From Vitrella brassicaformis CCMP3155 (lineage: Eukaryota > Protista > Chromerida): 43,372 bases of DNA. Below the pieces are notes generated by a model. The model saw only the letters and a list, made by a program, of their open reading frames with translations, made no database searches and was not told the origin of the DNA. The stretch is taken from the NCBI GenBank assembly GCA_001179505.1, contig CDMY01000608.1:1-43372 (forward strand), written 5' to 3'. This document shows, in pieces, positions 5,012 to 26,915 of the stretch (position 1 is its first letter; each line of letters begins with the position of its first letter). Made by a program: the position numbers and the translations under genes.

Positions 5012-5150
5012 CAAGGAAGCGGACGCCTTCTCCGGGCGCACATTTTCTGTTCAACGACGGGGAAGAGTACAAGAATTGCGCGAACAGGATGACGGCAAGA
5101 GTGAAGCCGGTCACAAGAACAGCAATCAGAGATAAACTCCTAATCCTCAT
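4947..5150 (-). pseudogene. Truncated type II membrane protein (signal anchor plus start of stem), interrupted by repeat copy B
   Basis: MRIRSLSLIAVLVTGFTLAVILFAQFLYSSPSLNRKCAPGEGVRFL runs into the repeat at 5011. It is divergent from the GT32 gene. Confidence 0.45.
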
Positions 5151-5348
5151 GTTTGGCAGCGGTAACAGGCAGGCTCAGACAGGACAGGCTGGAAGATCCG
5201 GGGGAAAAACAGAGGCGGAGGCGAGAGATAAAAGCCGCTCTGAGGGCGTTGACATCTAAGGAAAAATGTCACGTTAAAAATGTTAAGCTCAAAGCAAGCC
5301 TTGTCTTTGCAGCCACAAAGGGCAAGAAAGATAGCCAGTGACCAGACG

Positions 5349-6344
5349 ATGAGCAAAAAGGTCGTTCTTCTTGGGGTTTGCACTCTCAGTGCTGTCATTT
5401 CCATTTGGTGCTACTTCTCTGGAGTGTGCAAAACAACTGTGCAAAGAGGACCGGATGCCCTGCCTCTGCTAGCCTCTGCGTTTCCCCCTGGGACAGTTCT
5501 GAGGGAATGCCTGTGCTCAAAACATTCTGACTACAACTGGCCACGCAAGATCCCGCTCTGGGTTCACTTCGTGAAGGTTGGTGCGGTGGAATGGTTGCCC
5601 GTTTATGACGACTTTATGGACCAGTGGCAGGCGATGGCGCCTTGCCACACGCTTCTACTCTGGACAGATGCAACATTGCAGCGCCCACTGCGACGAATGG
5701 GGTTGGCAACTTTGTACAACCAAATGCCGGATGGGGTGGTACGGGCAGATTTTGCCCGCTACTTGTTGATGTATATGTATGCAGGAACTATATCAGACTT
5801 GGATTTGGTGCCCACAATTCCACTGCATCGCTGGTTCCCCCGAGAGGCGTTGGACCGAGTGAATCTCATCGTTTCTCCCGAGTGTGTTTCTGACCCCGTC
5901 GCCCAAATGAGCGGCTATTCTGCAGTGCCTCATCACCCCGTGTTGAAATCTGTGATGTCAATTGTTGCGGGGAACCTTGAACAGGCAAATTTCGTAGTCC
6001 CAGCCGACCGAGTGGTGCATGTGACTGGTCCTTTCGCCTTCACATCGGCAATAAACGCTGCTCTCCGCATCTCTTGGGAAGAAGATGTGCTTTCAGTTAT
6101 GAAGGCGGAGGCGTCTCCCATGCTTTTCTTCAACGAGACTGTATATGTTCTTCCCTTCGGTGACGCGAAAATGGGGCGGTCAATTCACGTGCATCTCAAT
6201 CTGTGGCGCAATTCGAAACTCAAGGTGAATTGGAAGCAGTTACAGCAAATGAACTTCGTTGACTATGTGTGTGCCAAGCGCATGAAACGGGGAAGAAGCT
6301 GTCTTACTAAGCATCAGCTAGCTTTATACAATAGATTACTTTGA
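5349..6344 (+). CDS. GT32 (Och1-like, DxD) glycosyltransferase with N-terminal signal anchor, intronless
   Basis: MSKKVVLLGVCTLSAVISIWCYF anchor; KIPLWVHF; RADFARYLLMYMYAGTISDLD matches the GT32 motif aD..RY..L...GG.Y.D.D; HHPVLK and TGPFAFT are also typical. Confidence 0.85.
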   Translation: MSKKVVLLGVCTLSAVISIWCYFSGVCKTTVQRGPDALPLLASAFPPGTVLRECLCSKHSDYNWPRKIPLWVHFVKVGAVEWLPVYDDFMDQWQAMAPCHTLLLWTDATLQRPLRRMGLATLYNQMPDGVVRADFARYLLMYMYAGTISDLDLVPTIPLHRWFPREALDRVNLIVSPECVSDPVAQMSGYSAVPHHPVLKSVMSIVAGNLEQANFVVPADRVVHVTGPFAFTSAINAALRISWEEDVLSVMKAEASPMLFFNETVYVLPFGDAKMGRSIHVHLNLWRNSKLKVNWKQLQQMNFVDYVCAKRMKRGRSCLTKHQLALYNRLL

Positions 6345-6839
6345 TGTCATAGTCGCTAATCCTGTGCGTCTGCATGCATATATATATACACCATTGGCTG
6401 GCAAATCGGAGAAAACCGCCAGAAATGGTGAAAAATCTAAGACCATGCGCACATATCCACCAACACTAAAGGAAGTCTGCTCTCTCATTGGACTGCCTTC
6501 TTGTGCGGACTCTGCAAATGCGATTGAATCACGAGTCGGCTGAACCTTGTCACAAACCCTTTACCCCCTCGCCCACAGGTGAACGTACCTTGAGTTTCAG
6601 TCCCAGGGTTCAAGGTGCGTTCGGATGTGCACGCGCGACACCGTTTTGTCTGCAGATGCGGTTCTCCCGCCCTCTGGTGGATGCGATGGGAGCTCCCTTG
6701 CATTGACCTTGGACATTTCCCGATTTCGGCATGGTCGACGGTCCGGGAGGCCAAACAGCCACAAAGACAAATGCAAGCAGGTAGGCGTCCTTGTTTGCAT
6801 GTCGGACTGTAAGTAAGCTCACGGATGTGCGTGTGGTCA

Positions 6840-8161
6840 GGTCGGTCAGCTGGATGACGAGCCCGTGGACGACCTGAGAGGCAAGAACAGAAAGAAGCGT
6901 CGCCACAACAACTCCGATGAGGTGAGCAATATTACCATGCACATCTCTGTTCATCGAACGAGGGCACCGACCGCTGTGTGTCAGGACGAGAGACCTGCTC
7001 CTGCCTTCACTTTCGCCGCCAAGCCTCGCTCAAAGCGGGTCAAGACACCAGCAGTCAAGACACCCGCACTCAAGAGGGCCCCAAAGAAGAATGCCGGGAA
7101 GAAGGATGTCGCCAAGAAGAAGGCCGCCATGAAGAAGGGCGGCAAGAAGAAGACCACCAGGAAGGCAGGGTCAGGGCAGGGCGGCGACGACAGCGACCAC
7201 ACGGCTCCACCCCACCCACCGCTGTCGTTCGGCAAGATGGAGCCGAGGTCATCGACGCATTTCCACAAGGCCAAGGAGGACGAGAAAATGGTAAGATGGG
7301 ATGGGATCGGCAGCCTACAGACAGACAGACAGGCAGACAGGCTGGCAGGCAGGTCTCCCTCTCGCTCTCACCGTCTGTGTGTATGCGTTTATCTCTGATG
7401 CAGTATTATGTCGTGTTTGTGTGCGCCGACTTTCTGGTGATGTGCCTCGGGTTCCTCGGCCGGCACTACGGCTCGGTCATCTGTTTCGAGATCCAGCGTC
7501 GGGTGTTTGAGCGCTACAAGACCGAGACTGCCGAGTCGGAGCAGCTGAGGTTCGGCGACTGGGTTCAAACCCACTGGGCCACCGAGCTGGTAAGGAAGGA
7601 AAGCACCACTGCCGGTGTCACATGTGGTCAGGGCAAGCCCCGAGAGGCGCGTGCGGGCTACACGGGGGCCCTGTGGGACTCGGAGAAGGACATCCTCGAC
7701 GATACGGTAATCAAGATAGCGTGAGGCTGACGGGATCCACTCGTGTCACAACACGCAGCACACCAGACTTACCTTCAGCTTCAACGTGCTGCATCAGCGT
7801 ATGGCCCACGTCGAGGCGGTCGGCAACAATACAACGGAAACCGACACGGTGAGAAGAAGTGGCAGAGAGGCGACGGAAGATGACACATCGTATGTTGGTG
7901 TGTCGTAATGTGTGTGTGTCTGAATGTCGTCAGTGGTTCGTCCAGCTGAAGTCGGTGGAGTCAGTCAAGGAAGCTCGTATCAAAGCGCAGACAGACTACA
8001 GGCTCAGGGCAGATTTCAGAGCGAAGATAGGCCACCCGATTACGAAAAGGAAGGTGACGGCGAGGTTGGCAGCGAAGAGAGAGCACGCCGTGCATCCCGA
8101 TCCGTATGGTGCACTGTCCGATCAGTCAGGCAAGAACACGGATGAATTCCTTAGCGGATGA
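6840..8161 (+). CDS. Hypothetical multi-exon protein with a Lys-rich low-complexity segment (may start near 6650)
   Basis: Coding-like exons (KKNAGKKDVAKKKAAMKKGGKKK; YYVVFVCADFL...HWATEL; WFVQLKSVES...EFLSG*) with GTGAG/GTAAG donors and (ACAG)n introns. Confidence 0.5.
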
Positions 8162-8536
8162 GCGGCGATGGATGTCAGTCAGTCAGACCATAGATAATCT
8201 GTGTCGATGATGTGGCGTTTTGATACTTGTCTGGACCTCAAGCTAGTTTTTGGCCGTGACGTACATCTCACTAAAGATGGCTCTAGGGACTTCAGTGACT
8301 GACAGATAGGACAGACATGAGTGTCATATTAGGTGGGGAGGGGGGTTGGCCTAGACAGGGCAGTCAATCTGAGGGGTTCATGGGTGGCTCTGCATCGGTC
8401 TGCAGCCCGGCAGGCTGCATCCCTCGCTCCACCACCCATGAACCACTCAGATTGACTGCCCTGTCGTCGGCCCTCCGGGCACCTGCGGTGCCCTCCGGAT
8501 TGAGTCAATCAACATGTACCAACTACTTCCGTGAAT

Positions 8537-11132
8537 CTACCGGATTTCAGAGGCACTGAGGCGTTCGAATTCAACAGGACTAATACGGGCAACCCAGCCA
8601 GCAAAATCAGTCAGGATGCCCTTTCCTTTCCATCCTCTCATTTGCGAATTCTTCACGAGGAAAGCGGTATATCCTGCACCAACGACACGTCTCCACACAG
8701 AGATGAACTCATCCTTGGACATAAGGGTGTCATAAAGAGGAAGGTTGTCCACTCGCAGATCGTATGGCGGCACGATTGGTCCCTTGTTGTTCTCAAATCC
8801 TTTTTGGTGGGCAAACGCCGGGTGGATCAACAAATGATGCTGTGGCATGAGATGGATGTGTCTGGTCAAGTTCGGCTGGGCGCGGATCATTTCCGTCGGC
8901 ACAAGCTGACCCCAGTCTTGGCTCCGCCGTGTCCGGGCAATCTCTTCCATCCAGGCCAACAAGAAGGGATTCCTTGGTTCAAAATTGACCAAAGGATCGT
9001 TTTGAATGTGGAACTTCCACTTCGGGTTGGCGTTGGGGTGCTGCTTGTGCTTTCCATCTACCAAAGTGAACGTGGACCCAAAATAATGTTTCTTTGTTTC
9101 CCCGGGCCATTCCAGGATGGGAAGCACATTTAGATCCTGCATGATGGGGCGCAGCATCAGGTCATCCGTGTCCATCCAGGTACCTCCCCATTTCCACAGC
9201 GCTACAAGCCGAACCGCATCGCTGGTTTCTCTCCAATCCACAGGTTGCATGCCTTGAAGCGGCGTGTCGTCAAAGAAAGATTGAGACCAAAACAGTAGAT
9301 GCACCTTGGGATATTCAGTCAACTTTTCCTCCAGACTTGCCGATACAATCTTACGCTCCGTAATGAAATAGACATGCGATTTTGGTTGAAACAGGGATAT
9401 ACCGTTGAGCAAATGTTGAAGTTGGCGGGAGCGATAAATGTCGGGTGGTTTTCCGCACCACATAAGAAAAATATTGTCGATCGTGGGCGTAGGATGATCA
9501 AACGAAGGAGACGGCGTGATGCGTGGATGTCTTGCGGATTCCTCAACGTCGCGATGTACTAGAGTCATTGTCGTCATGAGCGGCAGCTCATTACCTTTCC
9601 CGAATGTCACAGCAAAAGTCCAGGATGGTGATTCGGAGTCCGACTGCTGCTGCTCCGGCGGCCGAGAGAGCCGTCTGGGAAAAGGGGCCAGGCCGACGGC
9701 AAAATAAAAAGAAGTGTCTCGATCCTGCACGGCAATTGGATCCACTGGCATGATGGACCGACAGCGGGGAATCCATGCATCATAGCTCGGATGTCTCTCC
9801 GCATTGAAGATCACAACGCGATGATCATACCAAAGGTGTCCTTTGATTCGTTTTTGTTGATGAACGATGGCCACCATCAGGGACTTCTCACTTAGGGGTT
9901 GCTGCATCAAGGCATCAATGGCATGTGGACCATTCAGCCCCCAATCCAATGGCACGAGTTGAGAGCTCCCACGCCACTTGGTACTCTTGAGAGTTTGACA
10001 TGATCCTGGCGATAATGACATGGATGTACGCCAGACGGCTTGACCATTAGTTGTATCGATCCCAGATACTAACGGTCCGCCATTATTCTCGGCCCCAAAA
10101 TCCACAAACACGTTGACAGTCGTCAGATCAGGAAGGGGATATAGCATCGGCACGAGGTTTTTGCGGGGTACCCGGTCTTCGTCCATCACAAGTTCTACGC
10201 CGCTTAAATTGTCGGTGCACGAGCCGACACAGTTCGCTGCCATCATTTGTACGCCTTGATATCCTGAGGGCTTAGGCACGCAACATCGAATCTCGATCGA
10301 GAGGGGCTGCCCATCCATTCCGTGTGGATACCGCTTATCATGAGACGCCTCACATGGCCGCGGACATGAAGCCCACAGACTGTCGTCGAACCGCAGCGCG
10401 TCCATCCTGAAAACGCGCTGTGAGTAATTGGCCGTCATTCTGTATCCTGCCCGTCTCCAGTGGCCTCGTCTCGTTCCCCCTGAACCCGCCAGAGCAAGCT
10501 CTCCATCCTTTCCATGTCGGGTCAGGAACAGACGCACGTCGGCCACCTTTTCACCCCGCATGTTTTGCACGAAGATAGGCTCTACAAGCCAATCGTCAAC
10601 CTGCACAGACAATCATGACAGAGTATCTTCGCAAGCCTACATTTACCTGCACGGAATGTGATCGCCCGTCAAGAATGTGTTGCAGCCGCTGAGGCCGGAT
10701 GAAGCCGACGAAATTGTGAGCTCCATACGCCGCGTTGGGAATGCGTGCAAACCATGAGATGGCCAACACCCCCTCCAGACAATAGGGAGAGACACCCACA
10801 AATGAGGAACAGAGCGGAGCCCATGCAGATTGTGGAACAAAGAGGATGGAGGGGTTGTACGGAAGCCATTTCTCTTGACGAAGGTAGGACCCGCCCAGGG
10901 TAATATGCTGTCCCGATTGGATTAGACGCAGCATGTCTGCGGTCGTCATCGGGATCGCCGCCGGGGGGGCCTGCGATTGTCTCGGGATTGCACCTCGAGT
11001 CTGAATCAAATACCAGCCCAGCCATTGGCAACCCAAAAATAAACCCAGAAATAGACACAGGGGCCACATCCATGGGACAGCAGGCCGCGGGATAGATACA
11101 GATTCCGACTGGACTGGACTGCCTTGTGCCAT
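8537..11132 (-). CDS. ~849-aa type II membrane protein: GH130/GT91(Bmt)-like five-bladed beta-propeller fused to a C-terminal GT32 (A4GALT/A4GNT-like) domain; exons 11132..10647 and 10600..8537
   Basis: ATG 11132, TM WMWPLCLFLGLFLGCQWLGWYL, and an in-frame 46-nt GTAAAT...TGCAG intron at 10646..10601. Propeller-type motifs in order: YNPSIL, ADVRLF, RKNLVPM, WRGSSQLVP, IVH...YDHRVV, FYFAVGL. GT32 motif: SDAVRLVALWKWGGTWMDTD. Confidence 0.8.
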
Positions 11133-11630
11133 CCTCGAGCCGATCAGCTCGCGAAAGAGAACGGCTATGGAACCGCCGAGTGGGGAAAGTGAGCAGAAAC
11201 AATGCAACAGAGCAACCCGCTCATTCGAAACCCCGGCGACAGTTAGGCCGGGGGATGCACACGACGCGTTAAATCCCCATTCTAGTACATGCGTTAAATC
11301 CATTTCATAAGGGCTATCATGCATACACAATTTCCTTGCATAGTGTGGCACCCTCAATTTTTATGTTTAGTTGCTTTGTTTTAAATGCTTTGCCGGTTTT
11401 TAAATATTCTTCGGCACATTTGGGACGTTTTAAAAATGCGCGAACAGGGGAGGAGGCTTCAACGGGGTGGGTTTGAGGCCCTCTGGCAGCTAAAGCAAGC
11501 AACCGCAGGCATAAAAATTTGGGTTGAGTCCACGAGACCGCCATAGGCTCCTTCTGACTACGGTGTGTGTTCAGCACACAGCAACTTCAACTCCAACAAC
11601 CCTCCAGCTCAGCTTTCAGCTGTAGTGTGA

Positions 11631-12673
11631 ATGCATTACATCCGTGTCGTAGCGTGTGTGGCATCGCTATCGGCTTTCCTTTCTTAGCAGATTTCGTATA
11701 TGGACGTTTCTTCAGGCGCTTTTCCAACGTCAACACAGACCCCATGATCACAACCAGAGTGGAGCGGATGAGATGGCCTCCATGTCCTGTCCAAAGGATG
11801 CCCTGGTTTTGGCTGCCCTCGAAAGCGACGAATTTCGGAGACGATTACAACCTTGACCTTGGTGCCGCACTGCTGCACCGGGCGCCACTTCGTACCTATT
11901 CTCCGTCATCCTCGTATTCTAGTGGGTTGTGGATGACTTCGGATCGCGAGGTATCTCCCAAGGTGGTGGCCTGTGGGTCGGTGCTTCCTGTGGTGCGCAA
12001 GGGTGACGTGGTGGCTGGTCCCGGGGGATATGCCATGCAAAGGGGGATCAATTTTGACGCCTTGCGTGATCCCAACACAACTATTGCAAGCGTCCGCGGT
12101 CCAGATACCGCCTCCCTTCTGCGCAACCACTCGGTAGATCATTCTGACTTCCTTCCCAATATCGACCCAGGACTGTTGGCGGGGACTTTAGTGTGGCCTC
12201 ATTTACGCAACAAACCACAACGTGGCTCGACGGGCGCTTCAGAGAAACCTCGCCGCGTGTGCTTGATTCCACACGGCAGCGACGTCGCCTTTGAGCGACA
12301 CGCTCGTCGGTTTTGGACCGACATCCACATACTTTCTGTTCATCAACGAGCCTCGAAAATGGCGATTGCTATGGGGGAATGCAATCTGATTTTGTCTACC
12401 TCTCTGCATGGGCTCGTGTTTGCGGACGCCTTTCAAATTCCATCTATTTGGATCCACAGCAAAGGCACATCCCAGAAACCTTTTAAATTCAACGACTACT
12501 TCGCATCTTTGGGACACCCCCGCAACCACTGGGCGCCTAGTATTAAGGCCGCACTGGATATTCCTCAACAATATACTCGCCCTGTATTGAGCGACGTCGT
12601 GTTCGAAGACCTGGCCCGTCATTATCTTGAATCGTTTCCCTTCTCGCGAGTTTGTGGCAAGGAAGTAGAATAG
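11631..12673 (+). CDS. Polysaccharide pyruvyltransferase family (ExoV/GumL-like); 5' end has an apparent 1-nt frameshift or an unidentified upstream exon
   Basis: NFGDD, GSVL, VRGPDT, DPGLL, IPH, STSLHGLVFADAFQIP, FKFNDYF. ATG 11631 encodes MHYIRVVACVASLSAFL, out of frame with the main ORF at the T-run 11680-11682. Confidence 0.8.
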
Positions 12674-13627
12674 TGCCATTTTGTCCTGCGTCTGGTAAAC
12701 TTTCGAGGGCTGGCTCTGTGTTGACGGAGCGCAGAACGATGGTCGCTTGCATGCCGACAGAGCATTGAAGGGTGTATCGTGAACTGATGCGTTCGTGTTT
12801 ACTTCATGGGAAACGAAAGAGAAAACAGCCGGCAACGGCGCTTTTGGTGGATTTTCCGGGTCTTTTCGGCGGTTCGAAGTGCTCCGTACAGATATCGAAA
12901 CGCAGATTTTCAAAAAAGTTGAGACCTAGACCCAAGACCGGGGCTGTATAACCACAAGTAAGGCGCCCAGCAAGCTGAGCGCGGTGCACGACCCCCACAG
13001 TGGATGGGGCGATTGCGCGTTTGACGGAGAATGCGGATGTGTCCAAAACACACGTCGATCACACCATCCATTGCGATGAATTAAGAACACATACAATTGC
13101 ATGCATCTCCTTCTCCCTTTTGTAGCTGTGTGTGTATGTCTCTGTGCGCGGATGTGTCAGGTGGGAACACTAACAGGTGCACAGGTAAGGACAAGACGCA
13201 CAGCACAAATCATGAAGTGGGGGGGAAGCGCGGATTACGAGGGCGACAGACAAACAGCGCAGATCAACAAACAAGTGATTCTCCGCTAAATCGTCTACAA
13301 ATGACCGGTGAGAGAAGAGTGTGCCTTCTTGATGTCGAGCCTATTGGCACGATAGTCGATTGGCCCACGCTCTTGAGGAGCTTGCCCAGAGTCGTGACGA
13401 CAGCAGCCCATCGTGAGACGGCTTCCTTGTCATGTCTTTGTCGTTTGTGTCGATGACGTCGCCGAACTCTGCAGACACAGATGAGAGAGGCGTCGTTGTG
13501 TGGGAGATGTGTGTGTGTGTGTGTGTGCGTGGGTGGGTGGCGTGTGTATACACGTGGTACCTCACCTGATGTCGATCCGCGCTGGCGACCCTGACCACTG
13601 CAGGCCACGGCTTTTTCACCGTCGTTG

Positions 13628-13715
13628 GTGACGGCACACCTGATGCACGTAGAGATCTCATGCAAGCGACACCAGCAACGCACAGCCAGATGGTCGTCAT
13701 GTGGAAGCCACGATG
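13628..13715. repeat. ~88-bp local duplication, copy 1 (partner 14168..14257)
   Basis: GTGACGGCACACCTGATGCACGTAGAGATCTCATGCAAGCGACACC...GTGGAAGCCACGATG is nearly identical at both sites. Confidence 0.9.
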
Positions 13716-14167
13716 CTCCTCTGTTTGCCCTTGTTTACTTGGCTTTGCCATTCTTTGCCATCGGGCAAGCGAGTGGGGCCGTTTACCATAAGCCCTTCTT
13801 AACTTAGAGTGCGCAGCCACTTGAGGGTGTTCTTATCTCCAGGAAGTTACGACCGAAGTCGCCTGATTCTTATGTAATGGTAGGAGAGGAGGGGCAAGGG
13901 TGGATGTATTACCTGCAGCAGACAGGCACGCACAAAGCACCACACGTACGGGATGGATGAAAGCCTTCTTCAGGCCTGCCTACCATTGTCTTTGCTTAGA
14001 CGTATGGTGGTCGTTCGGGCGACAAATCGTGTCTTTTCGACCAGGCAGAGATCGATCGCCTGACTGACCAGCCACACAGACAGACAGCCCGACAGACAGC
14101 CCGACAGACAGACAGCCAAGGAGAGTGAGGGAGGGTGCTGTGTTTATGGATGTGTGTGTGTTCGCGT

Positions 14168-14257
14168 GTGACGGCACGCCTGATGCACGTAGAGATCTCA
14201 TGCAAGCGACACCCGCGACGCACACAGCCAGATGGTCGTTATGTGGAAGCCACGATG
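14168..14257. repeat. ~90-bp local duplication, copy 2; marks the breakpoint truncating the GT25 ORF
   Basis: Matches 13628..13715; the GT25 reading frame runs into it. Confidence 0.88.
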
Positions 14258-14810
14258 TGCCATTCTGCTCGTCATTCACGACCCGTCGCCGGTTGTGTCT
14301 ATGAGGCCTGATATTGTGTGCGCCCAAGAACAGAGCCACCGAGCTATTGGGCCATCGCATCAGAAGCTTGTCGAATTGTGCCTTCCATGTCTCGGCACCG
14401 ACAGGCTCGAAGGGCTTCGCATCGTCTTCAAAAAATATTGCCGTGTCAACGTTATCTTCGATAGCACGATCGACCGCGTGGATACTGCCGGCAAGAATTC
14501 CTAGTCCTCGTCTCGGCGCGCGGAACGTCTTGATTTGCTGCATATCGAGCTCAGGATACGCGGCTGTCCATTCCCTCAAAAAGCGAGAGTAACGTCCGGG
14601 TTCGCCAGCAGCCTCGGGCAGAGTCATCACGTACCCACGACGTATCGCATGTGGCATCCCTTCGGAATCCTCACTTAAGCCACAGCTGTTCGTGAAGTTG
14701 CCGGGTGTCGACAGTCTGAACAGGAAAGGGAAAGAGATCGGCGATGGTAAGACAGAAGGACCTGGTGTCCACTTGATGCCCACATTCACCTCTTTGGAAA
14801 CAAGTGCCAC
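14258..14810 (-). pseudogene. GT25-like glycosyltransferase fragment, 3'-truncated and lacking a signal anchor
   Basis: RGLGILAGSIHAVDRAIEDNVDTAIFFEDDA resembles the GT25 motif G..gc..SH..a.......alIfEDD; followed by LFLG. Confidence 0.55.
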
Positions 14811-15865
14811 GGAAAGGCTGCAAACAGTGCACGGTAATCAAAGTCGACAACTGGAGGCATCGGTCCCATGTCCAATGCTTCTTGGTACGAGGTCGCTGGC
14901 TGAAAAGTGCGATTCGTTGCATAATAGTAATCCTTGTACTTGTGAAGCCGTCCATTCGAGTTTGTCTCCAACATCAGCCGCGAAGGAATCCCAAATGATT
15001 CAGCAATGATCAACCCATGCAGTGACGAGCTCACGACAAACGCGCACCTGACCAGCTCGCTCAGCACTACCTTCCAGTCCTGCATCGGTGTGATCACGTG
15101 ACCGGGATACTCGGATTCATTCAGGCCCCGGCGAATCTCCTTAATTTGAGGGACATAACAAACATCGTATTTGGGTGGCCAGTGAAGTTTGAATTCGGGG
15201 AAAAGACACGGCACGAGCATGCCCGCATCGCCATACACCACAGGCAGAGCCTCCGCATCACCATATCCCTTCTCAAGCAAAAAGCTTCGTGTCTCGGGAC
15301 CTCGAATGGCAAACAGAGTCACGTTGCTTGGGAGTGGTCGTCTCAGCGTCTGTTCGCCCAGCATTCCAATCAACCAGCCGTAATCGCCAGAGCGGACAAA
15401 ATGCAGTACAGAGCCAATGGGAAGTAAACACTTTCCTCCCCGACGGCTTCGCAGGTTTCGCCACGGAAGTTGGAAGCGGCGACCGAGCATTCTCTCCACC
15501 AGAGCCAGCCCAATGTCATCACCGAAGTTCTTTTCGTTGGAGTATGTGCAGACGGCAAAGCCGAGATCAAGTGGGAGGGATATCCATGAGGCATTTGCCA
15601 GTGACTCTTCGAGGCCTGGCACCTGGACACTCTGGCGCACACACCCTGGAATCGGTGCCGAGGATGCTCCTGGGACGCCTTTGTCTGGCGTAGCTTTGGA
15701 ACCCTCACTGAACCTGTTCGTAAAATTGCCGATTGCTGACGATCTGAATAAAAGAGGGAGAGGGACCGGCGATTTGAGATACCACAGCTCCTCCCGAAAA
15801 CACAGTGTCAACAGGACAAGAACCGAAGCAGACAGCAGAGTAAAACAGGAAGACAAAGACAGCAT
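14786..15865 (-). CDS. Polysaccharide pyruvyltransferase family (ExoV/GumL-like) with signal anchor, intronless
   Basis: MLSLSSCFTLLSASVLVLLTLCF anchor; NFGDDIG, IGSVLH, AIRGPETR, YGDAGML, VSSSLHGLIIAESFGIP, KYKDYY. Confidence 0.88.
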   Translation of the reverse strand: MLSLSSCFTLLSASVLVLLTLCFREELWYLKSPVPLPLLFRSSAIGNFTNRFSEGSKATPDKGVPGASSAPIPGCVRQSVQVPGLEESLANASWISLPLDLGFAVCTYSNEKNFGDDIGLALVERMLGRRFQLPWRNLRSRRGGKCLLPIGSVLHFVRSGDYGWLIGMLGEQTLRRPLPSNVTLFAIRGPETRSFLLEKGYGDAEALPVVYGDAGMLVPCLFPEFKLHWPPKYDVCYVPQIKEIRRGLNESEYPGHVITPMQDWKVVLSELVRCAFVVSSSLHGLIIAESFGIPSRLMLETNSNGRLHKYKDYYYATNRTFQPATSYQEALDMGPMPPVVDFDYRALFAAFPWHLFPKR

Positions 15866-16149
15866 CAGCACTGATGATCACTCTACAATCCGCCAGAAGG
15901 CGACCGTTAACGCACAGACTTCCTTCAGCTTTGACTTGATATTTGTGTGAGCGTCTGTGAACTTCAGTGTGAAGCAGCATCTCGACGACCTCTCTCAAAA
16001 AAAAGGCTGCCATTGTTTGGGAATCATTCTAATCCCGTCTTGGAAGTGGCTGAAATTCAGCAATGAGTAGGAATAGCACAGTGCACATGACATCTCGTCT
16101 CAAGCGTGGTGGACGGAAATCAGCATTGAAGATTCGCCCATCCATATAG

Positions 16150-17133
16150 ACCGCTGCCGTCTCTGAGGTGGTCGGCCCCTCCTTCTCCCTCCCCTCTCTC
16201 CAGGACCTTCTCTCGAGACTGCAGGTTCGGCTACAGCAGCGCCTGACCGATCAACTGCACAAGTTCCGCTTCAACGAGCTCTTCAACTCCCGCTCCCCCG
16301 ACAGCAGAGCCCGCGCCCGTCTTCTGAGCTGCCAAGGGCCTCTTTCGTCTGGTTGGCTGTCAGCAATCCCTTCCAGCGATAGCAAGACACTGAACAACTT
16401 CCAGTATCGCCATGCAGTCGCCGGGTGCTCCGGCTTTGCCGTCCCGCACGCAACCGTCTCGCAGCGATGCATCTGCGGCGGGGAGGTGGACAAGTTTGGC
16501 GATCACTTCTACGTGTGTCACATCGGCCGTGAGCGGGTCACGAGACACAGCAATATGCGCAACTTGTTTGTTCGCATCCTGGCTGAGGCATATGTCCCTT
16601 CCAATGTGGAGGTGTCTCTGCGCAGCCTCGGCATCACCCCGCCCGACGACAACCCCAAGAGCTAGCGGATGGGCATCTATTGTGTGATCGACGGCAGTGA
16701 ATACTTGCTCGACGTCACCATCGCCCACCCCTGCCGGCCTGACGACTCCCCCATTCCCTTCCACCGAACAGTCAACCGGCGCACTGCACAGCTTCCGGGT
16801 GGCAAGGCGGCTCAGCTTGCGGAGAAAGACAAGATCGACAAGTAGTACCCGACCGCCCAAGCAGCCGGCTTCCGCTTCGTGCCTCTCGCCGCTGAAAAAT
16901 TCGGCAGGGGGCAGAGAAGACCATAGACTTTCTCAAGATGCTCGCCAAGCGGAAGCCCCGCCACACATCCATTCCCATGGAGGAGGACACAGCTCCCCGA
17001 GAGAGCATCGTCAACCACTGGAGCCAGCTCCTGTCCGTCGAGCTGATGAAGCACAACGCGTTTCAAGTGGCGAGTCGTGCGCAGCTCGCGGCGGCCGCCA
17101 GAGGGCCACGGAGGGCCAGCGCGTTTCCGGAGG
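16150..17133 (+). mobile_element. 5'-truncated, degenerate non-LTR retrotransposon (CRE-like, CCHC plus restriction-like endonuclease), copy 1
   Basis: CICGGEVDKFGDHFYVC...RH zinc knuckle; R-M-(D>G)...LLDVTIAHP; AEKDK..K; FVPLAAE. Premature stop at 16663 and frameshifts. Highly similar to 36125..36998 (minus strand). Confidence 0.88.
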
Positions 17134-17421
17134 ATGTTATGGTGTGCTTGTGATAGCCACTTGGGGGTGGTGCTTCTGCAGTCAGAGAGACATTGGTGTG
17201 AGGCGTGCATTGGTGCACCTGTTGGCCCATCCATGGGGAGTCTCTGGCAGCCCCGTGAGGGAGGCCTTTGCATTGGCCTCGAGAGCATTGCAAATACGGC
17301 CTTTTGTCGTTCTCACCGGATTGACAGCCATGGCTGCAAGACGCACACACACATCAAGGAGCACAGGAGGGTGCATGTTTGTCTGTGGCGTTGGCACGTA
17401 GTGCGAGTATGTCTGTGTGTG

Positions 17422-17542
17422 GTGGGCGACGCCACTGGAGGATGCGCCAGGCGGGCGCCGAGGATGGTGCTGGTATGTTTGTCGCGTGATCATTGAGAGT
17501 AAGTCGATTGAGACAGTTTATTTCATGAGAGACCGACAGACT
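17422..17542 (+). repeat. 121-bp repeat, inverted relative to 23002..23122
   Basis: GTGGGCGACGCCACTGGAGGAT...CATGAGAGACCGACAGACT; 5 mismatches counted against the reverse complement of 23002..23122. Confidence 0.92.
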
Positions 17543-19811
17543 TTTCCTGTCGTTCTGCTATGTGTTAGTCCATCTCCCCCCACATGCACACGAGTGGGCC
17601 GTAACATATACTGCAATGGCAGACACACACGGACGACAGTCGAGTGTATGCACAGACGCGAAAAGCAACCCACGTCACACGACTTCTGAGTGCCTAATAG
17701 GCGGGAAGCCGTGGTTTCGTCGAATAAAGCGGAAAGGGAGGACGATATATTCTCTGCATGTAGGCATGTTTTCTGAATCTTTTCTTGTGGCAGTGCGTTT
17801 CTCGTCTGCGTGACCTGTTGAAATGTGAGAGCTTGCTATCTGAAGTATTACATCGTAATGAGGTGATTTTGCGAGACGATGGCATTCATAAACTATTTAC
17901 CTTGCCCTACGTCAGTCAACACGCTCCACTGGCTCTGTTCCTTTTTTCAGACCACACTTCATATTATACGCACACACGCGCATCAGTGCAACGTCAGTCA
18001 TACCACACGTTCGCGACGCTATCCATGCCCCTTTCACATCCGGATGGTGTGAGATAAGAAAGTGTCGCTTGGGTCAAAGACCCAGGACACATGCACACAC
18101 TCCTTGTCTGCACACGAACTGAAGCGAGGGCACCCACACGGTCAGCCAGACTCCTCCCTGCGATCCAATTGCTGTGATCAACACTATTCCCCCGTCTCCT
18201 CCCCTTCCAAGACGGGAGGAAATACTTACAGAAAATGTAGTTGGAGAGTATCATGCAGGAAGGCACACCGAAAGAAAAAGGGGAACACAGAAATATTTCA
18301 AGACACATCTGCACTTGTAGTGCCACTTAAAGGTCTTTGCCACACTTCGTGTCTCGAACTCCCCATTGACTGTTCTCCTCGTGTGAAACGTAATAGCTGC
18401 GTCGGCTCAGGAGCGCATGTTCTAGGCACGACAAGCAGCGGAAGCTGTCGATGATGTGTCGATAAGACAGGGACGAGATATACACATGTCTCTAAGCGAA
18501 AAGTCAAATCACAAAAGCGAGAGCACACACAGCACCTACCCAACATCCTTCTCTCCAGCACCCGCCCCCTTGCCCCCATTTGACACTTTCCGGCATGACC
18601 CACCTCCACAACTGGAAACTGACCACTGAAAACTGACCGCCACGTGAAATTAAGAGTGAGCTTCGACTGTAAATGAATGGTGATACATGAATGAATAGAA
18701 AGTATGACGAGACAGCTGTGCACCACTCGTACGTGAACATGAAATCTACGATAAAATCTACGTCTTATCTCTGACAATTGTGATGTGCTGAAGCCAAGGT
18801 CCACTGGGCCAGCCTCTGTCTACACGTAGCACAGCGATACAAACGCCACTGCCTGTGTGGGGCTCTCCGAGAGTATTGGTAGGCACGCAGGACACACATA
18901 CGTACAATTCCTGTCTGTACACGAAAAATCAGAGCACAGCCACGACCACCCAGACTTCCTTCCGCGACCAGCCAAGTTTCCCATCTCCTTTACCCTCCGG
19001 TCTGCAGTCTGTAGAAGAAAACACCAGAATGCAACTAGGCCCCAGACAACACGAAGGAAATGGTGGCGAATGTGGTGGGAAAAGGTCACGCAGGCACACA
19101 GAAAGGACAACACATGTATGAGAGAACTTCCAGGCAGTCAGCCACTGGTCTAGTGTAGGGAGCTGGCAATCAATGTCCAAATCGGATGGAGTAAAGAAGA
19201 AGAGAGCACCAAAATCCGGAGGGTTGCGAGGGCTGCAGTCGTGCGTGGCAAGGACAAAAGGGATCGTCGAGCAAACAGAGGTGTAGGAAACGGAAGGGGC
19301 ACAAAAACAAGGACAAGACGACAGCTGCAATAGTGAGACAGCAAGAGAGATGGAAAGTTAGCCTCATCACAATGAGCACAATTAGCCCGAGAGTGTCAAA
19401 ACCAACCATATCCACAGCATCCCAACAAGGCGGGGGTGTGACCCACCATACAGCGTCAGGTCAATTCTGCTTTTTGTGTTTTCGTTGCTTCTTGCCCTTC
19501 ATGTGGTTCGCCTCCGACTGCTCACCACCACGATTAATTTTTGGGGTGTCCCACGGCACATTCCCGTTTTGCTGCAGTTGCCTGCTCTCGCTTCGCGCCA
19601 CCTCTGTGGTGTTGGAGCTGACTGCAGCCAACCGACGACCCTCCGGGCAGCCAAGGTTGTCTGGGTCAGACTGAGAAGGAAATAAAACACGTAATCATCA
19701 TTCCTTTGCATTCACGTAATGATTTGGAATAACTCACGAGGGAAGAACAGAGGAAAAAGGGGCTCGTGTCTTCATCTCGCTTCCTCACGAACGATTGTCC
19801 CCTCACTTTGA

Positions 19812-23560: not shown

Positions 23561-23939
23561 TCTGATCCCCTTCATCCTTAGCCGGGCAGCTTGGCACATA
23601 GAATCGGCCAGCTCTTGCAAAAGCCCTGTAGAGGTCGTGGCCGCTTCGACTTTCCAAGTGGCTTCTTCTCACTATTAACATCCGCACCAGCTGCGTGTCC
23701 ACAGGACTTGTTCCCGGCCATTATCTTCCAGCCGTCTCCAGCTCTGGGTGCCTTTCCTACGACAGGCTCCCTATCGCTCTTGAGAAAGCACATCCCATCA
23801 TCTCCCAGGCCTACGTGGACCCAATAGTTGCACTCCTCCGTGGCTGCGCACCAGTCGGCACAGTCCAGGTACTCCGGGTACCCATGAGTAGCCACCTCCA
23901 GATCGGCACCGGGCGCGTAGTCGAGATTCTCCTCGATAA
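23561..23939. repeat. PAN-domain/C-terminal module duplicated at 27621..28008
   Basis: About 9 substitutions plus one 9-bp duplication (GCCCTGTAG) counted over ~380 bp. Confidence 0.95.
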
Positions 23940-26915
23940 CGCAAGAGCGTAATCTAGGTTCTCGTCGGGGACGCTGACCTTGGCCGACGACGTCCATGAT
24001 AACCACAAGCCCGTCACCCTTCTTATTCTCGCCCCACAGCTTGACATCGGTGAGTTTCGTGCCATTGATTCGCTGAACGGTTTGAACGACGGGCTCCTCG
24101 TACTCCCCGTCGTCGCTCATATACTTAGTGAAGAGGAACGTTGCAGTGTAGTTCTTGGACGTATCGAGAAAGTTGAGGGGGATGAAAGGGATAACGCGCG
24201 TCTCCACTGTTCCGCTCACGACGCCCAGGAACCATGTGCTATTCGACCGTCTCGCCAGCACGGTAAGGTCTCCTATTATTGATGGAGGAAGGACCCGTGT
24301 CTCGTCCCACACTGTCGGAATCTTCATAATGATGTCACGATAGCTTTGCTCGAGAATTATTTCGGGGTCTTCGACGATGGTCTGCAGGGGTGAAGTGAAT
24401 GTAATTAACGTCGCGACCTGATGGACCTGGGGAAAGTGGCAGGCATTGGGGGCCGATCGACGACGGATCTCCTGCCTTCCATTATCTTGCTGCATTGCAA
24501 ACTTACTAGAGTTGTCGCGCCTCTGAGTGTTTGCAGCGAGAGTGGCGTGTAGTCTCCAGCACCACTTGGGAACCTTCAGGCACATGCACGGATCAAATTG
24601 GTCTGTCTTATGACTGTTTTCATCTACCTCGTGAAGGTGAGTGCAGCGTTGTGTGATGGTGGAATCTTCGTGTCAATCATGGGGTGCGCGTTGACCTGCA
24701 AAGGAGACAAAAGATCCACAATGCAGAGCGCTGGTCTCTCCTGCGTGAGAGATCTATCTGTGTCGCCACCTCCAAACCCCAGATGGCCTCTTGCGTTATC
24801 AGATTCGGATACGTTCGTGCTTCGCCCGTGGTCTTATCTACTCCGTGAAAGTTGAGCAAGAGCTTGCGTTTCTGGACAAATGAATCCATTGACTTGTCCT
24901 GCTGAGCTCGTTTGTTGGCCAGCTTGGCCTCTTTTCTTGCAGAGTGTTCTCTTACAGCTGCTTCGCGACAGATGGTTTCCTGCAGCACGATGGTCGGTAA
25001 AGTGCCGGAACCGAAGAAATCCATCTGCATCAGGAGTCACGCAGGACATGATATACTAACCTTCAACAGTCAGTGCACTTCACCTACCTTTACGCCAACA
25101 GCGCCTGCATCCTCGACACTATCGAGAAACTCCCGAAGGTCTTTGTAATTGTCGGTTGGATCTTCAATGTCTCCGCGGTGTTTCCACAGGAAGACGCCCA
25201 CCCCCCTCTCTTTGCCATACGTTGTGAGGCTCTTGACGCTCCCCCATTTGTCGGGCCACTCTTCCCAACCTGTGTCGGATCAACAGGTTGACACTCTCGC
25301 CCAATTGATTTGGCATATGATCATCTTTCGTCTCCACCTATGTCTACAGTTGCGTATTCAAAGCCAAGCGCGTCTGCGGCATCGATGTAGGCCCATTCAA
25401 TCTCACGGGGACGGTTGTGACACCCACTGGGTGCGGCCTGGTAATGTCCATTAACCCATGCAGCAGCCATAAGCATTAGTGTACGATCATTACCAGGCAG
25501 CTCCACACAGACCTACAGACAAGAAAAGTCATGGAGTCAATGATGAGAAAGCAAAAATGGCCAAGAGTTCCTGGATGTTGGTATCCTGAGACCCACCTTC
25601 CTGGTTTAATGTATGTTGTGTCATTGAAGAGGCCCGGATTTCGCGCCTCCGGGGCCTCGTTGAGGCTGCTCAACATGTCATGGTCGACCAGCTGGTCCAG
25701 GTTTGCCGCCAATTGGATTACTCGCCAAGACGTCTTGACAGGAAGCTGGAGCTCCAAAGGTCCCCACAAGCCCCTGTACTCCCGTACGCTCTGCCTCACT
25801 CTCGTAAGCTCGCTTCTGAAGCCGACGCCATCAGGCAACGCGACGAAGTGAAGGCCCTCCCACCCAAGGAGAGCGGCCCTGTGGCATACACAAAGCCATG
25901 CACGGCACACTACACAATACATGGCTCACTCGGCTATCACACGGTAAGGGAAGGGACCCTGTTTGTCAAGATCCTCAATGGTTACAGGGGGAGAGTAACG
26001 ATCGATTGTGATCCCGTCTTCCAGATGCCGGGACCACAATGATGCTGCTGGAAAACTCATGTACTGACCATTGGCCGACTGCATGTATTACAGACGAAGA
26101 CAAAATGCGTGCGTACTGGATAGATTTGTGTCCCCCACTTTTCTTACGAAGTGGCCGCCTGCGAAGAATATTTGGTCTCGCCTTTCTATCTGTGTCAAGT
26201 GGCAAACGGAGGAAGCAGTTCCCGTTTGTCTCTGCATGTGGTGTGGCTGTATGGTTCTCACAATCCAAGCTCTATCGGTTGCTTCCAGTTCCATCAAGAT
26301 CTCAGACCCGTCGTCCTGAATTTGGACGCGGTCGCCCCAGCCCCCCTGCAGCGGGATGTGATAAGAGAATGCCACGCCTGGGCTGTCACCACCGAACACA
26401 CGAAAATGGACATCGTAGGTTAGGTTGGTTGGAAGATGCCGGACGGTGTAAGACGTGTCAACTGAAAACCAAACAGGAGAAATGCGAAACCAACACTGAG
26501 TCTACATTCACCGCTTTCGCTCTTTGCGACTCGATGAGCTCCTAAGGTGGCGTACGTATCCACCTGTGAGAGGACAGCTGTGAGCAGAACCTTCCAATGT
26601 GCTAACCCATACCTTCCTCATGTGTCGTGCCTCGCTTTCAATCGTAACATTCTCCCCCAGATGACTGCCGTCCTCGAGGACGAACCCAAGAGCCGATGGG
26701 TTCACTATCCGACGAGTTCCAGAAGTCACCATGTACTTGAGCTTGTCATTGGGATCGGTGAAAACCCTTGCCCGGAGCTTGTGTATGGATGGAGCCGAGA
26801 TGGTGGACTGAAACGGTGCAGCATGGGAAAAGCAAAGGCTGAGACAGAGGGAAGCGGCAAAAGCGACCCCTGTCCAGCTGCGGAGGGAAATATCTATCAT
26901 GTAGGCGCATACCAT
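23578..26915 (-). CDS. Secreted glycoside hydrolase family 97 (retaining-type signature) with a C-terminal PAN/Apple domain; multi-exon
   Basis: Signal peptide; LKYMV...SALGF; FRVFGGDSPGVAFSY; TSWRVIQLA...YIKPG; YIDAADALGFEYATVD; GVGVFLW; GVK|MDFF; LLNFHG..TGEARTYPNLITQEAIWGLE; HNAALTFTR; GDYTP; FTSPLQ; PTVWDETRVL; LARRS..WFLG; then PAN C..EENLDY...CADWC...CNYW...CFLK. Confidence 0.9.

What the first reader, a model, noticed from the sequence alone, without database searches (positions are those of the whole stretch)
5349..15865. Compact, almost intronless cluster of membrane-anchored glycosyltransferases and bacterial-type pyruvyltransferases: candidate eukaryotic pyruvylated-glycan biosynthetic locus
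Seen: five glycan-modifying ORFs in ~10.5 kb (GT32, propeller-GT32 fusion, pyruvyltransferase x2, GT25 fragment), plus a truncated anchored ORF at 5150. They carry only one 46-nt intron between them, while neighbouring genes are heavily intronated. Most begin with a type II signal anchor. Established: ExoV (succinoglycan) and GumL (xanthan) pyruvyltransferases cap bacterial exopolysaccharides; eukaryotic glycan pyruvylation is known in few lineages (e.g. S. pombe Pvg1). Inference: a recently acquired or retroposed module retargeted to the secretory pathway to build an anionic pyruvylated surface or cyst-wall glycan.
Basis: partly seen in the sequence, partly recalled or inferred. Interest (0 to 1): 0.72.

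Follow-up and report, generated by a model that had tools for sequence, protein, structure and literature searches.

The report
Intron-poor glycan-enzyme cluster in Vitrella
In the coral-associated alga Vitrella brassicaformis, about 10 kb holds four intact, almost intron-free genes for sugar-chain-modifying enzymes, including two bacterial-type enzymes that add pyruvate to sugars. They look like a real toolkit for a negatively charged surface glycan, but the locus was pieced together by duplication, not acquired as one block.

Summary
The window is contig C608 of Vitrella brassicaformis. It carries a GT32-like gene (5349-6344 +), a two-exon gene for a GH130-fold propeller fused to GT32 (11132-8540 -, one 46-nt GT..AG intron), and two PF04230 pyruvyltransferases: PvT1 (11744-12673 +) and PvT2 (15865-14786 -). 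It also carries a GT25-like remnant (about 14735-14283 -).

Corrections:
- The GT25-like piece is a pseudogene. It has lost its anchor, and a dispersed 1.3-kb repeat cuts it short.
- PvT1 has no anchor after its first ATG.
- The two pyruvyltransferases belong to different clades. PvT2 is GumL-like; its nearest relatives are bacterial (35-41% identity, many Chlamydiota/PVC), and it sits on a long branch. PvT1 groups with other eukaryotes.
- The propeller-GT32 architecture is a rare protist family, not bacterial.
- The locus is a mosaic of segmental duplications shared with contigs C861 and C212. PvT2-type/GT25-like adjacency recurs on C212 and C953.

A single recently acquired or retroposed module is therefore not supported. 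Bacterial-type catalytic domains retargeted by added type II anchors is supported for PvT2. A shared pathway (beta-mannoside synthesis plus pyruvate capping) is plausible but untested. Only PvT1 is directly shown to be transcribed from this locus. The scan had already noted a similar glycosyltransferase-plus-pyruvyltransferase neighbourhood elsewhere in this genome (s1-233269).

The parts
5349..6344 (+). GT32-like glycosyltransferase. The ORF opens at 5280; Met at 5349 gives MSKK followed by a 20-residue hydrophobic type II anchor. It has a DLD motif, is single-copy in the genome, and is one uninterrupted ORF.
   Evidence: PF04488 scores 22.2 bits, just under the 23-bit cut-off; weak hit among solved structures to Och1-type 9n3s (E 0.0017).
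8537..10600 (-). Exon 2 of the fusion gene (687 codons plus stop). It encodes the rest of the GH130-fold propeller and the C-terminal GT32 domain (WMDTDD motif).
10601..10646 (-). 46-nt GT..AG intron of the fusion gene.
   Evidence: sequence. One search shows a joint skipping 46 nt in an RNA-like contig, which comes from the C861 paralog. Protein P0125 reads across the joint.
10647..11132 (-). Exon 1 of the fusion gene (162 codons): short tail, anchor WMWPLCLFLGLFLGCQWLGWYLI, stem, and first propeller blade with the YNPSI motif.
11133..11743 (.). Head-to-head intergenic region between the fusion gene and PvT1. The PvT1 transcript reaches at least to 11431. Homology with the C861 copy of the fusion gene ends at 11223.
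11744..12673 (+). PvT1, a PF04230 pyruvyltransferase (309 aa from the first in-frame ATG). It is an unspliced mRNA spanning 11431-12836. It has no anchor after the ATG. An in-frame hydrophobic stretch lies upstream without an ATG.
12954..14267 (.). Dispersed repeat of about 1.3 kb, with at least 20 copies in the genome at 67-92% identity. It supplies the false C-terminal third of the 'GT25' ORF.
14283..14735 (-). GT25-like pseudogene fragment inside ORF 13980-14810. It lacks the anchor and about 120 C-terminal residues found in the 300-400 aa paralogs. No RNA-like contig covers it.
14786..15865 (-). PvT2, a GumL-like PF04230 pyruvyltransferase (359 aa) with a type II anchor and a stem of about 100 residues. 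It is one uninterrupted ORF.
14720..18275 (.). Segmental duplication shared with contig C212 (about 90% identity overall, 96.6% in the PvT2 coding sequence).
8526..11223 (.). Segmental duplication shared with contig C861 (97-98% identity). It covers just the fusion gene.

Best explanation
This is a real, lineage-specific neighbourhood of secretory-pathway glycan-modifying genes in Vitrella brassicaformis.

Shown:
- Four intact genes lie here: a GT32-like transferase, a bifunctional GH130-fold propeller plus GT32 enzyme, and two ketal-pyruvyltransferase homologs from different clades.
- A GT25-like pseudogene lies with them.
- Together they carry one intron, in a genome where about 95% of genes have introns.
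- PvT2 is a bacterial GumL-type catalytic domain with a eukaryotic type II anchor and stem added at its N-terminus.
- The locus was assembled and copied by repeat-rich segmental duplication.
- PvT2-type genes sit next to GT25-like genes at three loci.

Inferred:
- The enzymes face the Golgi or ER lumen.
- The propeller domain makes beta-mannosidic (or similar) linkages from a nucleotide sugar, as GT108 enzymes and some GH130 enzymes do.
- The GT32 domains add alpha-linked hexoses.
- The GumL-like enzymes transfer pyruvate from PEP to form a ketal on a terminal hexose. This would give an anionic cap on a wall or surface glycan.

The intron poverty most likely reflects foreign or late origin for the pyruvyltransferases. 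For the other genes it may reflect young, fast-duplicating lineage-specific families. A single transferred island is not the likely cause.
For: - Families and folds.
- Organism.
- Intron and gene models.
- Intron statistics for the species: (PMC9250747).
- Bacterial affinity of PvT2 and its added N-terminal extension.
- Invariant RGP, SSLHG and KYxDY residues, in the order of the PEP-binding R/H/K of CsaB.
- Long-term purifying selection: dN/dS 0.17 for PvT2 against the C953 copy and 0.20 for the GT25-like fragment against C212.
- Transcription: PvT1 from this locus and the C953 paralog; the C861 and C212 copies in an RNA-like run.
- Recurrent pairing of PvT2-type and GT25-like genes on C608, C212 and C953.
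- In 27 of 80 bacterial loci the closest PvT homolog is followed directly by GH130-like genes. This is the same functional pairing as PvT1 head-to-head with the propeller gene here.
- The propeller domain travels with GT32 in 8 of 10 distant relatives, in either order.
Against: - There is no co-expression, localisation or chemical evidence.
- For the fusion gene and PvT2, the only RNA-like contigs carry the variants of the paralog copies, not of this locus.
- PvT1 lacks an anchor after its ATG, so it may not reach the lumen.
- The GT25-like member is dead.
- Recent duplicates show relaxed constraint (dN/dS 0.42-0.59).
- Adjacency at the three loci may be inherited from one duplicated pair and so may not be independently maintained.
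- The chlamydial GH130-like family and the Vitrella propeller family are not detectably homologous at profile level (hhalign 15%).
- The pyruvyltransferase profile does not reach the solved Pvg1p structure, so the catalytic-residue match rests on motif order only.
Confidence: 0.5

Rival explanations
1. The genes are neighbours by accident of duplication. A repeat-rich, rearranging region has collected young, intron-poor, lineage-specific glycosyltransferase-type genes. They act in separate pathways, and some copies are on the way to becoming pseudogenes.
For: - The locus is a mosaic of segments shared with C861 and C212.
- A dispersed 1.3-kb repeat lies inside it.
- Gag-like ORFs sit beside the PvT paralogs.
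- The GT25-like copy is broken.
- dN/dS is 0.42-0.59 for the recent copies.
- The C861 duplication took the fusion gene alone, without PvT1.
- An earlier follow-up of a similar neighbourhood reached the same cautious verdict.
Against: - Four unrelated glycan-enzyme families within 10.5 kb of a 72.7-Mb genome is unlikely without selection or common origin.
- PvT2-type and GT25-like genes stay adjacent even in the old C953 pair (73% and 55% identity).
- Bacteria pair the same two enzyme types, PvT and GH130-like.
Confidence: 0.33
2. One reading: a single recently transferred bacterial or giant-virus island, or a set of retrocopies, later fitted with anchors.
For: - The genes are intron-poor.
- PvT2's best matches are bacterial.
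- PF04230 genes occur on phage and giant-virus contigs.
- GC is below the published genome mean of 58.1%.
Against: - The parts have different affinities.
- No homolog of the GT32, GT25-like or propeller genes lies next to PvT in 80 bacterial loci.
- Viral PvT relatives are more distant (23-33% identity) than bacterial ones. No viral relative of the GT25-like gene was found, although that scan finds only close relatives.
- The PvT2 clade sits on a branch of about 2.4 substitutions per site, so the transfer is not recent.
- The fusion gene keeps an intron.
- GC3 hardly differs from the neighbours.
Confidence: 0.07
3. Bacterial contamination or a mis-assembled chimera.
For: The pyruvyltransferases are bacterial-like, and the related contigs C861 (14.9 kb) and C953 (8.4 kb) are small.
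Against: - The fusion gene has a spliceosomal intron.
- Eukaryotic anchors are fused in frame.
- Transcript contigs from two JGI samples match at 100%.
- The window also holds eukaryote-style genes with PAN domains.
- Several independent runs cover the locus.
Confidence: 0.02

Closest known systems
GumL, the xanthan ketal-pyruvyltransferase of Xanthomonas, and its relatives in Chlamydiota/PVC and Pseudomonadota
   Same: PvT2 aligns over the whole catalytic domain at about 37% identity with Xanthomonas loci and 35-41% with chlamydial and other PVC loci. The NFGD, RGP, SSLHG and KYxDY motifs are invariant.
   Different: The Vitrella proteins carry an extra N-terminal region of about 100 residues with a type II anchor and stem. 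They form their own long-branch clade, and they sit beside eukaryotic-type glycosyltransferases and not in an EPS operon.
Schizosaccharomyces pombe Pvg1p and the PvGal pathway
   Same: Pvg1p is a Golgi-membrane PF04230 enzyme that caps glycans with pyruvate from PEP, giving surface negative charge (PMC6801904). It is the functional model for what is proposed here.
   Different: A profile of PvT1, PvT2 and their relatives does not reach the solved Pvg1p chain (5ax7) among solved structures, so this is a different subfamily. As far as I know the S. pombe pvg genes are not clustered (own knowledge). The acceptor here is unknown.
GH130 beta-mannoside phosphorylases/synthases and the GT108 mannosyltransferase-phosphorylases of Leishmania
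   Same: The fold is the same five-bladed propeller: Z 20-22.5 to GH130 structures and Z 17.6 to a Leishmania major protein annotated as hypothetical, 2b4w. NPSI and DPRL-type motifs are present. GT108 and some GH130 enzymes use GDP-Man to make beta-1,2-mannosides (PMC12814180).
   Different: There is no PF04041 hit and no profile-level match to the chlamydial GH130-like family. The domain is membrane-anchored and fused to GT32, so it is expected to face the lumen, whereas as far as I know GH130 and GT108 enzymes are soluble cytosolic proteins. Catalytic residues were not mapped.
GT32 (Och1-type alpha-1,6-mannosyltransferases and alpha-1,4-glycosyltransferases)
   Same: Both have the PF04488 DXD region and type II topology. 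The stand-alone gene has a weak match to Och1 structure 9n3s.
   Different: Both are very divergent; the stand-alone gene falls just under Pfam's cut-off. The two GT32-like sequences in the window are not alignable with each other by BLASTP.
Earlier scan note s1-233269: another glycosyltransferase plus pyruvyltransferase neighbourhood in the same genome
   Same: It has the same theme: GT25-like genes next to a pyruvyltransferase, with the arrangement recurring within the genome.
   Different: It is on different DNA and has different partner families (GT47, GT14-like, GT43). I could not place it among the loci I fetched.

Membership tests
PF04230 polysaccharide (ketal) pyruvyltransferase | Family HMM scores above the curated cut-off | tested here: met
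   PvT2 scores 36.6 bits and PvT1 29.6 bits against a cut-off of 25.3. The best stretch covers only the C-terminal half of the model.
PF04230 polysaccharide (ketal) pyruvyltransferase | Full-length similarity to bacterial members | tested here: met
   PvT2 is 35-41% identical over residues 113-356 to 80 bacterial loci and aligns end to end. PvT1 is about 30% identical to actinobacterial proteins, one of which UniRef names 'GumL protein', and 31-48% to eukaryotic ones.
PF04230 polysaccharide (ketal) pyruvyltransferase | PEP-binding Arg, His and Lys (CsaB R148, H308, K328; Pvg1p R217, H339, K361) | tested here: inconclusive
   An invariant R188 (RGP), H283 (SSLHG) and K309 (KYxDY) occur in that order. 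The profile finds no pyruvyltransferase among solved structures, so the residues could not be matched by alignment.
PF04230 polysaccharide (ketal) pyruvyltransferase | Transfer of pyruvate from PEP to a sugar | not testable with these tools
   This needs an enzyme assay.
GT32 | PF04488 DXD sugar-binding region above the cut-off | tested here: inconclusive
   The fusion scores 27.1 bits, above the 23-bit cut-off. The stand-alone gene scores 22.2 bits, below it.
GT32 | DXD motif and type II membrane topology | tested here: met
   Read from the translations: WMDTDD in the fusion, SDLDL in the stand-alone gene, and N-terminal hydrophobic anchors in both.
GH130 / GT108-type beta-propeller | Five-bladed propeller fold closest to GH130 | tested here: met
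   The top five structural matches are all GH130 (Z 20.3-22.5, 268-298 aligned residues), above GH43 and other propellers at 18.9 or less. Foldseek's top hits are also GH130. The model has pLDDT 77.
GH130 / GT108-type beta-propeller | Sequence membership (PF04041 or a profile match to a GH130-like family) | tested here: not met
   There is no Pfam hit at E up to 5, no hit among solved structures, and hhalign gives only 15% probability against the chlamydial GH130-like family. It is therefore filed as 'GH130-fold', not as a GH130 member.
GH130 / GT108-type beta-propeller | Catalytic Asp and phosphate or nucleotide-binding residues in place | not tested
   Only the motifs NPSI and ADPRLF were seen in alignment A2. 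No residue-level superposition was available.
GT25 | PF01755 family HMM | tested here: not met
   There is no hit for the fragment or for the full-length paralogs.
GT25 | Other similarity to GT25 proteins | tested here: inconclusive
   Language-model features place a full-length paralog nearest green-algal GT25 clusters (0.94-0.95, 177-185 shared features). There is no alignment-based support.
Co-functional biosynthetic gene cluster | Linkage kept across independent loci or species | tested here: inconclusive
   PvT2-type and GT25-like genes are adjacent on C608, C212 and C953, but these loci may share one ancestral pair. PvT and GH130-like genes are adjacent in 27 of 80 bacterial loci. No related eukaryote genome could be searched.
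Co-functional biosynthetic gene cluster | Co-expression and a shared product | not tested
   Only assembled contigs were available, and the single reads call was used.

The most novel reading that the evidence does not exclude
Vitrella makes pyruvate-capped beta-mannoside (or similar) surface glycans in its Golgi by a pathway of mixed ancestry. One part is a GumL-type pyruvyltransferase taken from a bacterium, possibly a chlamydia-like or other PVC associate of protists. It gained its membrane anchor and stem by exchange with the neighbouring GT25-like gene. It works with a protist-specific bifunctional enzyme in which a GH130-fold propeller acts as a lumenal, membrane-anchored glycosyltransferase fused to GT32. 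To my knowledge that architecture and location have not been described for this fold.
Probability: 0.2. Interest if true: 0.75.

Novelty: new variant of a known kind. Interest (0 to 1): 0.52.

Why it matters
Pyruvate ketals on eukaryotic glycans are known chemically in fission yeast, red and green algae and a few animals, but the only characterised eukaryotic enzyme is Pvg1p (PMC6801904).

This locus offers candidate enzymes in a chromerid, the photosynthetic sister lineage of apicomplexan parasites. It also shows concretely how a bacterial catalytic domain can be fitted with a Golgi anchor.

It exposes a rare, undescribed protein family that joins a GH130-fold propeller to GT32. That would widen the known roles of this fold from cytosolic phosphorylases and transferases to secretory-pathway glycan synthesis.

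It is also a case of physical clustering of glycan genes in a protist, which could guide study of the thick Vitrella cell and sporangium wall.

Tried and rejected
1. Folding the propeller domain from a single sequence failed (pLDDT 34). The 21-sequence alignment was needed.
2. Direct BLASTP and hhalign between the Vitrella propeller and the GH130-like gene next to bacterial PvT genes found no homology. Co-transfer of a PvT/GH130 operon is therefore not supported.
3. BLASTP of the GT25-like protein against a GT_PLOD gene in a bacterial PvT cluster found nothing.
4. NCBIfam gave no named subfamily for any of the proteins.
5. A profile of the pyruvyltransferases did not reach Pvg1p or any pyruvyltransferase among solved structures.
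6. Viral origin is not favoured. Viral contigs hold PF04230 genes, but at only 23-33% identity. No viral relative of the GT25-like gene was found, although that scan finds only close relatives.
7. The trees could not name a donor. The Vitrella PvT2 clade falls outside all 79 bacterial sequences on a long branch. No AU test was run.
8. The RNA-like contigs over the fusion gene and PvT2 turned out to carry the variants of the C861 and C212 copies. They are not evidence that the window's own copies are expressed.
9. No exact-sequence transcript was found for PvT2. A contig carrying the GT32-like gene may be genomic DNA.
10. I looked for the GT47, GT14 and GT43 genes of the earlier scan note among long ORFs of C212, C953 and C861. 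I found only gag-like ORFs.
11. The 85-codon anchored ORF at 5404-5147 has no paralog and no support.
12. The joined two-exon protein was not searched or folded.

Full report
**Organism and setting.** The window is contig C608 of a 72.7-Mb, 1064-contig genome. A 96%-identical paralog of one of its genes is named in UniRef as a Vitrella brassicaformis protein, so the organism is this chromerid alga. No Rfam family is present. GC is 50-63% per kb, 54% overall, below the published genome mean of 58.1% (PMC9250747).

**What is at 5349-15865.** Long ORFs lie at 5280-6344 (+), 8537-10612 (-), 10596-11357 (-), 11567-12673 (+), 13980-14810 (-) and 14786-15871 (-).
- Pfam gives PF04488 (the GT32 DXD region) for the first two: 22.2 bits, just under the 23-bit cut-off, and 27.1 bits.
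- Pfam gives PF04230 (polysaccharide pyruvyl transferase) for 11567-12673 and 14786-15871: 29.6 and 36.6 bits against a cut-off of 25.3.
- The 'GT25 fragment' has no Pfam hit.

**The fusion gene.**
- Reading the minus strand gives exon 1 at 11132-10647. It encodes MAQGSP..., the anchor WMWPLCLFLGLFLGCQWLGWYLI, a stem, and the first blade with YNPSI.
- A 46-nt GT..AG intron follows at 10646-10601. Exon 2 runs 10600-8540. The model is 849 aa.
- The database paralog P0125 reads straight across the joint. An RNA-like contig skips exactly 46 nt.
- The N-terminal 460 residues have no Pfam or solved-structure sequence match. They have only 16 relatives among 1.84 billion representative proteins.
- Eight of ten relatives tested also carry PF04488, with the two domains in either order. 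The one relative with a species name is from Amoeba proteus.
- A single-sequence fold failed. With a 21-sequence alignment the model reached pLDDT 77 and pTM 0.84.
- An exhaustive structural search put five GH130 enzymes on top: 5ayc Z 22.5, 9fj8 21.9, 4udg 21.1, 3taw 20.7 and 9erh 20.3. GH43 and other five-bladed propellers scored 18.9 or less. A Leishmania major protein annotated as hypothetical, 2b4w, scored 17.6. Foldseek agrees.
Sequence membership in GH130 is not met.
- GT108 and some GH130 enzymes make beta-1,2-mannosides from GDP-Man (PMC12814180). This is the basis for the activity I infer.
- I worked exon by exon and with P0125.

**The two pyruvyltransferases are not duplicates of each other.** They are about 26% identical.

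*PvT2 (15865-14786).*
- It has two close paralogs, on C212 (94% aa) and C953 (71-73% aa), and nothing else eukaryotic in a 5.8-billion-protein search. The next hits are 260-290-aa proteins at 36-43% identity.
- Two of these next-best hits were checked and sit in bacterial polysaccharide gene clusters.
- Across 185,579 prokaryote genomes, the best 80 loci are 32-41% identical. They are dominated by Chlamydiota and other PVC bacteria, and also include Xanthomonas at 37%. I take the Xanthomonas gene to be GumL from my own knowledge.
- The alignment shows a shared full-length catalytic domain with invariant NFGD, RGP, SSLHG and KYxDY motifs. The Vitrella proteins have about 100 extra N-terminal residues holding a type II anchor and stem.
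- In a quick maximum-likelihood tree the three Vitrella genes form a 100%-supported clade on a branch of 2.4 substitutions per site. The clade lies outside the 79 bacterial sequences (82% support), so the donor is unresolved and the transfer is not recent.

*PvT1 (11744-12673).*
- It groups with two unnamed proteins at 48% identity. One of them lies on a contig with ERCC4, MUS81 and zf-MYND genes, so it is eukaryotic.
- Next come Isochrysis galbana and Balamuthia mandrillaris, and only then actinobacterial GumL-like proteins.
- Those eukaryotic relatives have signal peptides or anchors.
- In the window, two transcript contigs from different JGI samples are 100% collinear with 11431-12836 and 11471-12819. 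The mRNA is therefore unspliced.
- Its first in-frame ATG (11744) leaves no anchor. A hydrophobic stretch (VCGIAIGFPFLADFVYGRFF) lies upstream in frame but without an ATG. Whether PvT1 reaches the lumen is open.

*Catalytic residues.* Mutagenesis of CsaB identified R148, H308 and K328 as PEP-binding (PMC10435577). The subfamily here keeps an invariant R, H and K in that order. Its profile does not reach the Pvg1p structure, so the correspondence is by motif order only.

**The GT25-like piece is a pseudogene.**
- Full-length paralogs are single-ORF, type II-anchored proteins of 300-400 aa. Language-model features place one nearest green-algal GT25 clusters (0.95).
- The window copy matches only their residues about 19-177.
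- Its 5' end is read-through from the PvT2 3' region. Its last 100 codons belong to a dispersed 1.3-kb repeat (window 12954-14267, at least 20 copies).
- No RNA-like contig covers 14140-14700.

**The locus is a mosaic.**
- Window 8526-11223, which is just the fusion gene, is 97-98% identical to C861.
- Window 14720-18275 (PvT2 plus upstream DNA) is about 90% identical to C212.
- The GT25-like fragment is 89-90% identical to two places on C212.
- The RNA-like contigs over the fusion gene and PvT2 carry 20 of 20 and 17 of 17 variants of the C861 and C212 copies. Only PvT1 is therefore directly shown to be transcribed from this locus.
- Gag-like ORFs sit beside the PvT paralogs on C953 and C212.
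- dN/dS is 0.46-0.59 (fusion gene, window vs C861; dS about 0.04) and 0.42 (PvT2, window vs C212; dS 0.06).
- It is 0.17 for PvT2 vs C953 and 0.20 for the GT25-like fragment vs C212. There is long-term constraint on the families and relaxed constraint on the youngest copies.

**Is the clustering meaningful?**
- For: four unrelated glycan-enzyme families lie within 10.5 kb.
- For: PvT2-type genes have a GT25-like neighbour at all three loci, including the old C953 pair.
- For: PvT1 and the fusion gene are head-to-head, with 612 bp from ATG to ATG.
- For: in 27 of 80 bacterial loci the PvT gene is followed at once by one to three GH130-like genes. This is the same functional pairing.
- Against: the bacterial GH130-like family is not detectably homologous to the Vitrella propeller.
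- Against: none of the other Vitrella families occurs in those bacterial loci.
- Against: the three Vitrella loci may descend from one pair.
- Against: the C861 duplication did not take PvT1 along.

**Intron poverty.** In this species 22,163 of 23,412 genes have introns, with a mean of 7.9 per intron-bearing gene and a median intron of 81 nt (PMC9250747, Table 1). One 46-nt intron in four intact genes is therefore exceptional.
- For the pyruvyltransferases, bacterial ancestry explains it.
- For the others the cause is open. Retroposition is excluded for the fusion gene, which keeps its intron.
- GC3 of the cluster ORFs (0.56) is only slightly below two neighbouring ORFs (0.60-0.63).

**Verdict.**
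- The idea of a pyruvylated-glycan toolkit made of retargeted bacterial-type enzymes is reasonable and partly supported.
- The idea of one recently acquired or retroposed module is not supported.
- The most interesting concrete results are the rare GH130-fold-plus-GT32 family and the GumL-type enzyme with an added Golgi anchor.
- The scan had already reported a similar neighbourhood elsewhere in this genome (s1-233269).

Noticed in passing
window 15865-15680 (PvT2 N-terminus) vs L008:6875-7110 and L003:6739-6500 (GT25-like genes on C212): The anchor and stem of PvT2 and of its C212 copy align with those of the neighbouring GT25-like genes. Smith-Waterman scores are 64-84, against 25 +/- 4 for shuffles (0 of 300 as high). 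Other type II anchors (the C647 GT25-like gene, the C953 PvT) give z near 0. This suggests the targeting module was exchanged between adjacent genes. BLASTP found no alignment, so support is limited.
   Followed up: partly
window 12954-14267: A dispersed repeat of about 1.3 kb, with at least 20 copies at 67-92% identity and an internal ACAG microsatellite (14068-14118). It has no recognised coding domain. It cuts the GT25-like copy short.
   Followed up: partly
L103-L182 (bacterial loci), e.g. L109:6001-7855, L124:6001-9109: In Chlamydiota, Verrucomicrobiota and unnamed MAGs the GumL-like pyruvyltransferase gene is followed directly by one to three tandem GH130-like genes (27 of 80 loci). This looks like a conserved operon, and I found no description of it.
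   Followed up: partly
P0125 (UniRef model of the C861 paralog) vs window 11132-10647: The public protein model starts at MLRLIQ and omits the conserved upstream ATG and anchor, which are intact in both copies. The annotated start is probably too far downstream.
   Followed up: partly
window 23578-24585 (-) and 27638-28498 (-): ORFs with GH97_C plus PAN domains, and with a PAN domain alone. These are further carbohydrate-related, probably secreted proteins 8-12 kb from the cluster. Their exon structure was not worked out.
   Followed up: no
L002:1195-2850 (C953) and L009:4694-6031 (C212): Long ORFs with weak retrotransposon gag similarity lie beside the PvT paralogs. This fits transposon-rich surroundings for this gene family.
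   Followed up: no
window 8323-8510: Short dispersed repeats (about 90-170 bp, many copies at 80-92% identity) lie just downstream of the fusion gene, at the edge of the C861 duplication. An inverted self-match lies at 8354-8465.
   Followed up: no
window 6865-7724 (+): Lys/Ala-rich ORFs containing a 15-nt tandem repeat (7039-7164) lie between the GT32-like gene and the fusion gene. The DNA is mostly unique in the genome and has no Pfam match. Whether it is a gene is unknown.
   Followed up: no
window 36126-36998 vs about 16300-17150: An inverted copy (about 89% identity to the C212 counterpart) of DNA that lies just upstream of PvT2. It is another dispersed element within the window.
   Followed up: no
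G000:C243:233515-234344 and G000:C488:346516-346596: Further PF04230 matches in the genome: one in two pieces with an in-frame TGA, one very short. They were not examined.
   Followed up: no
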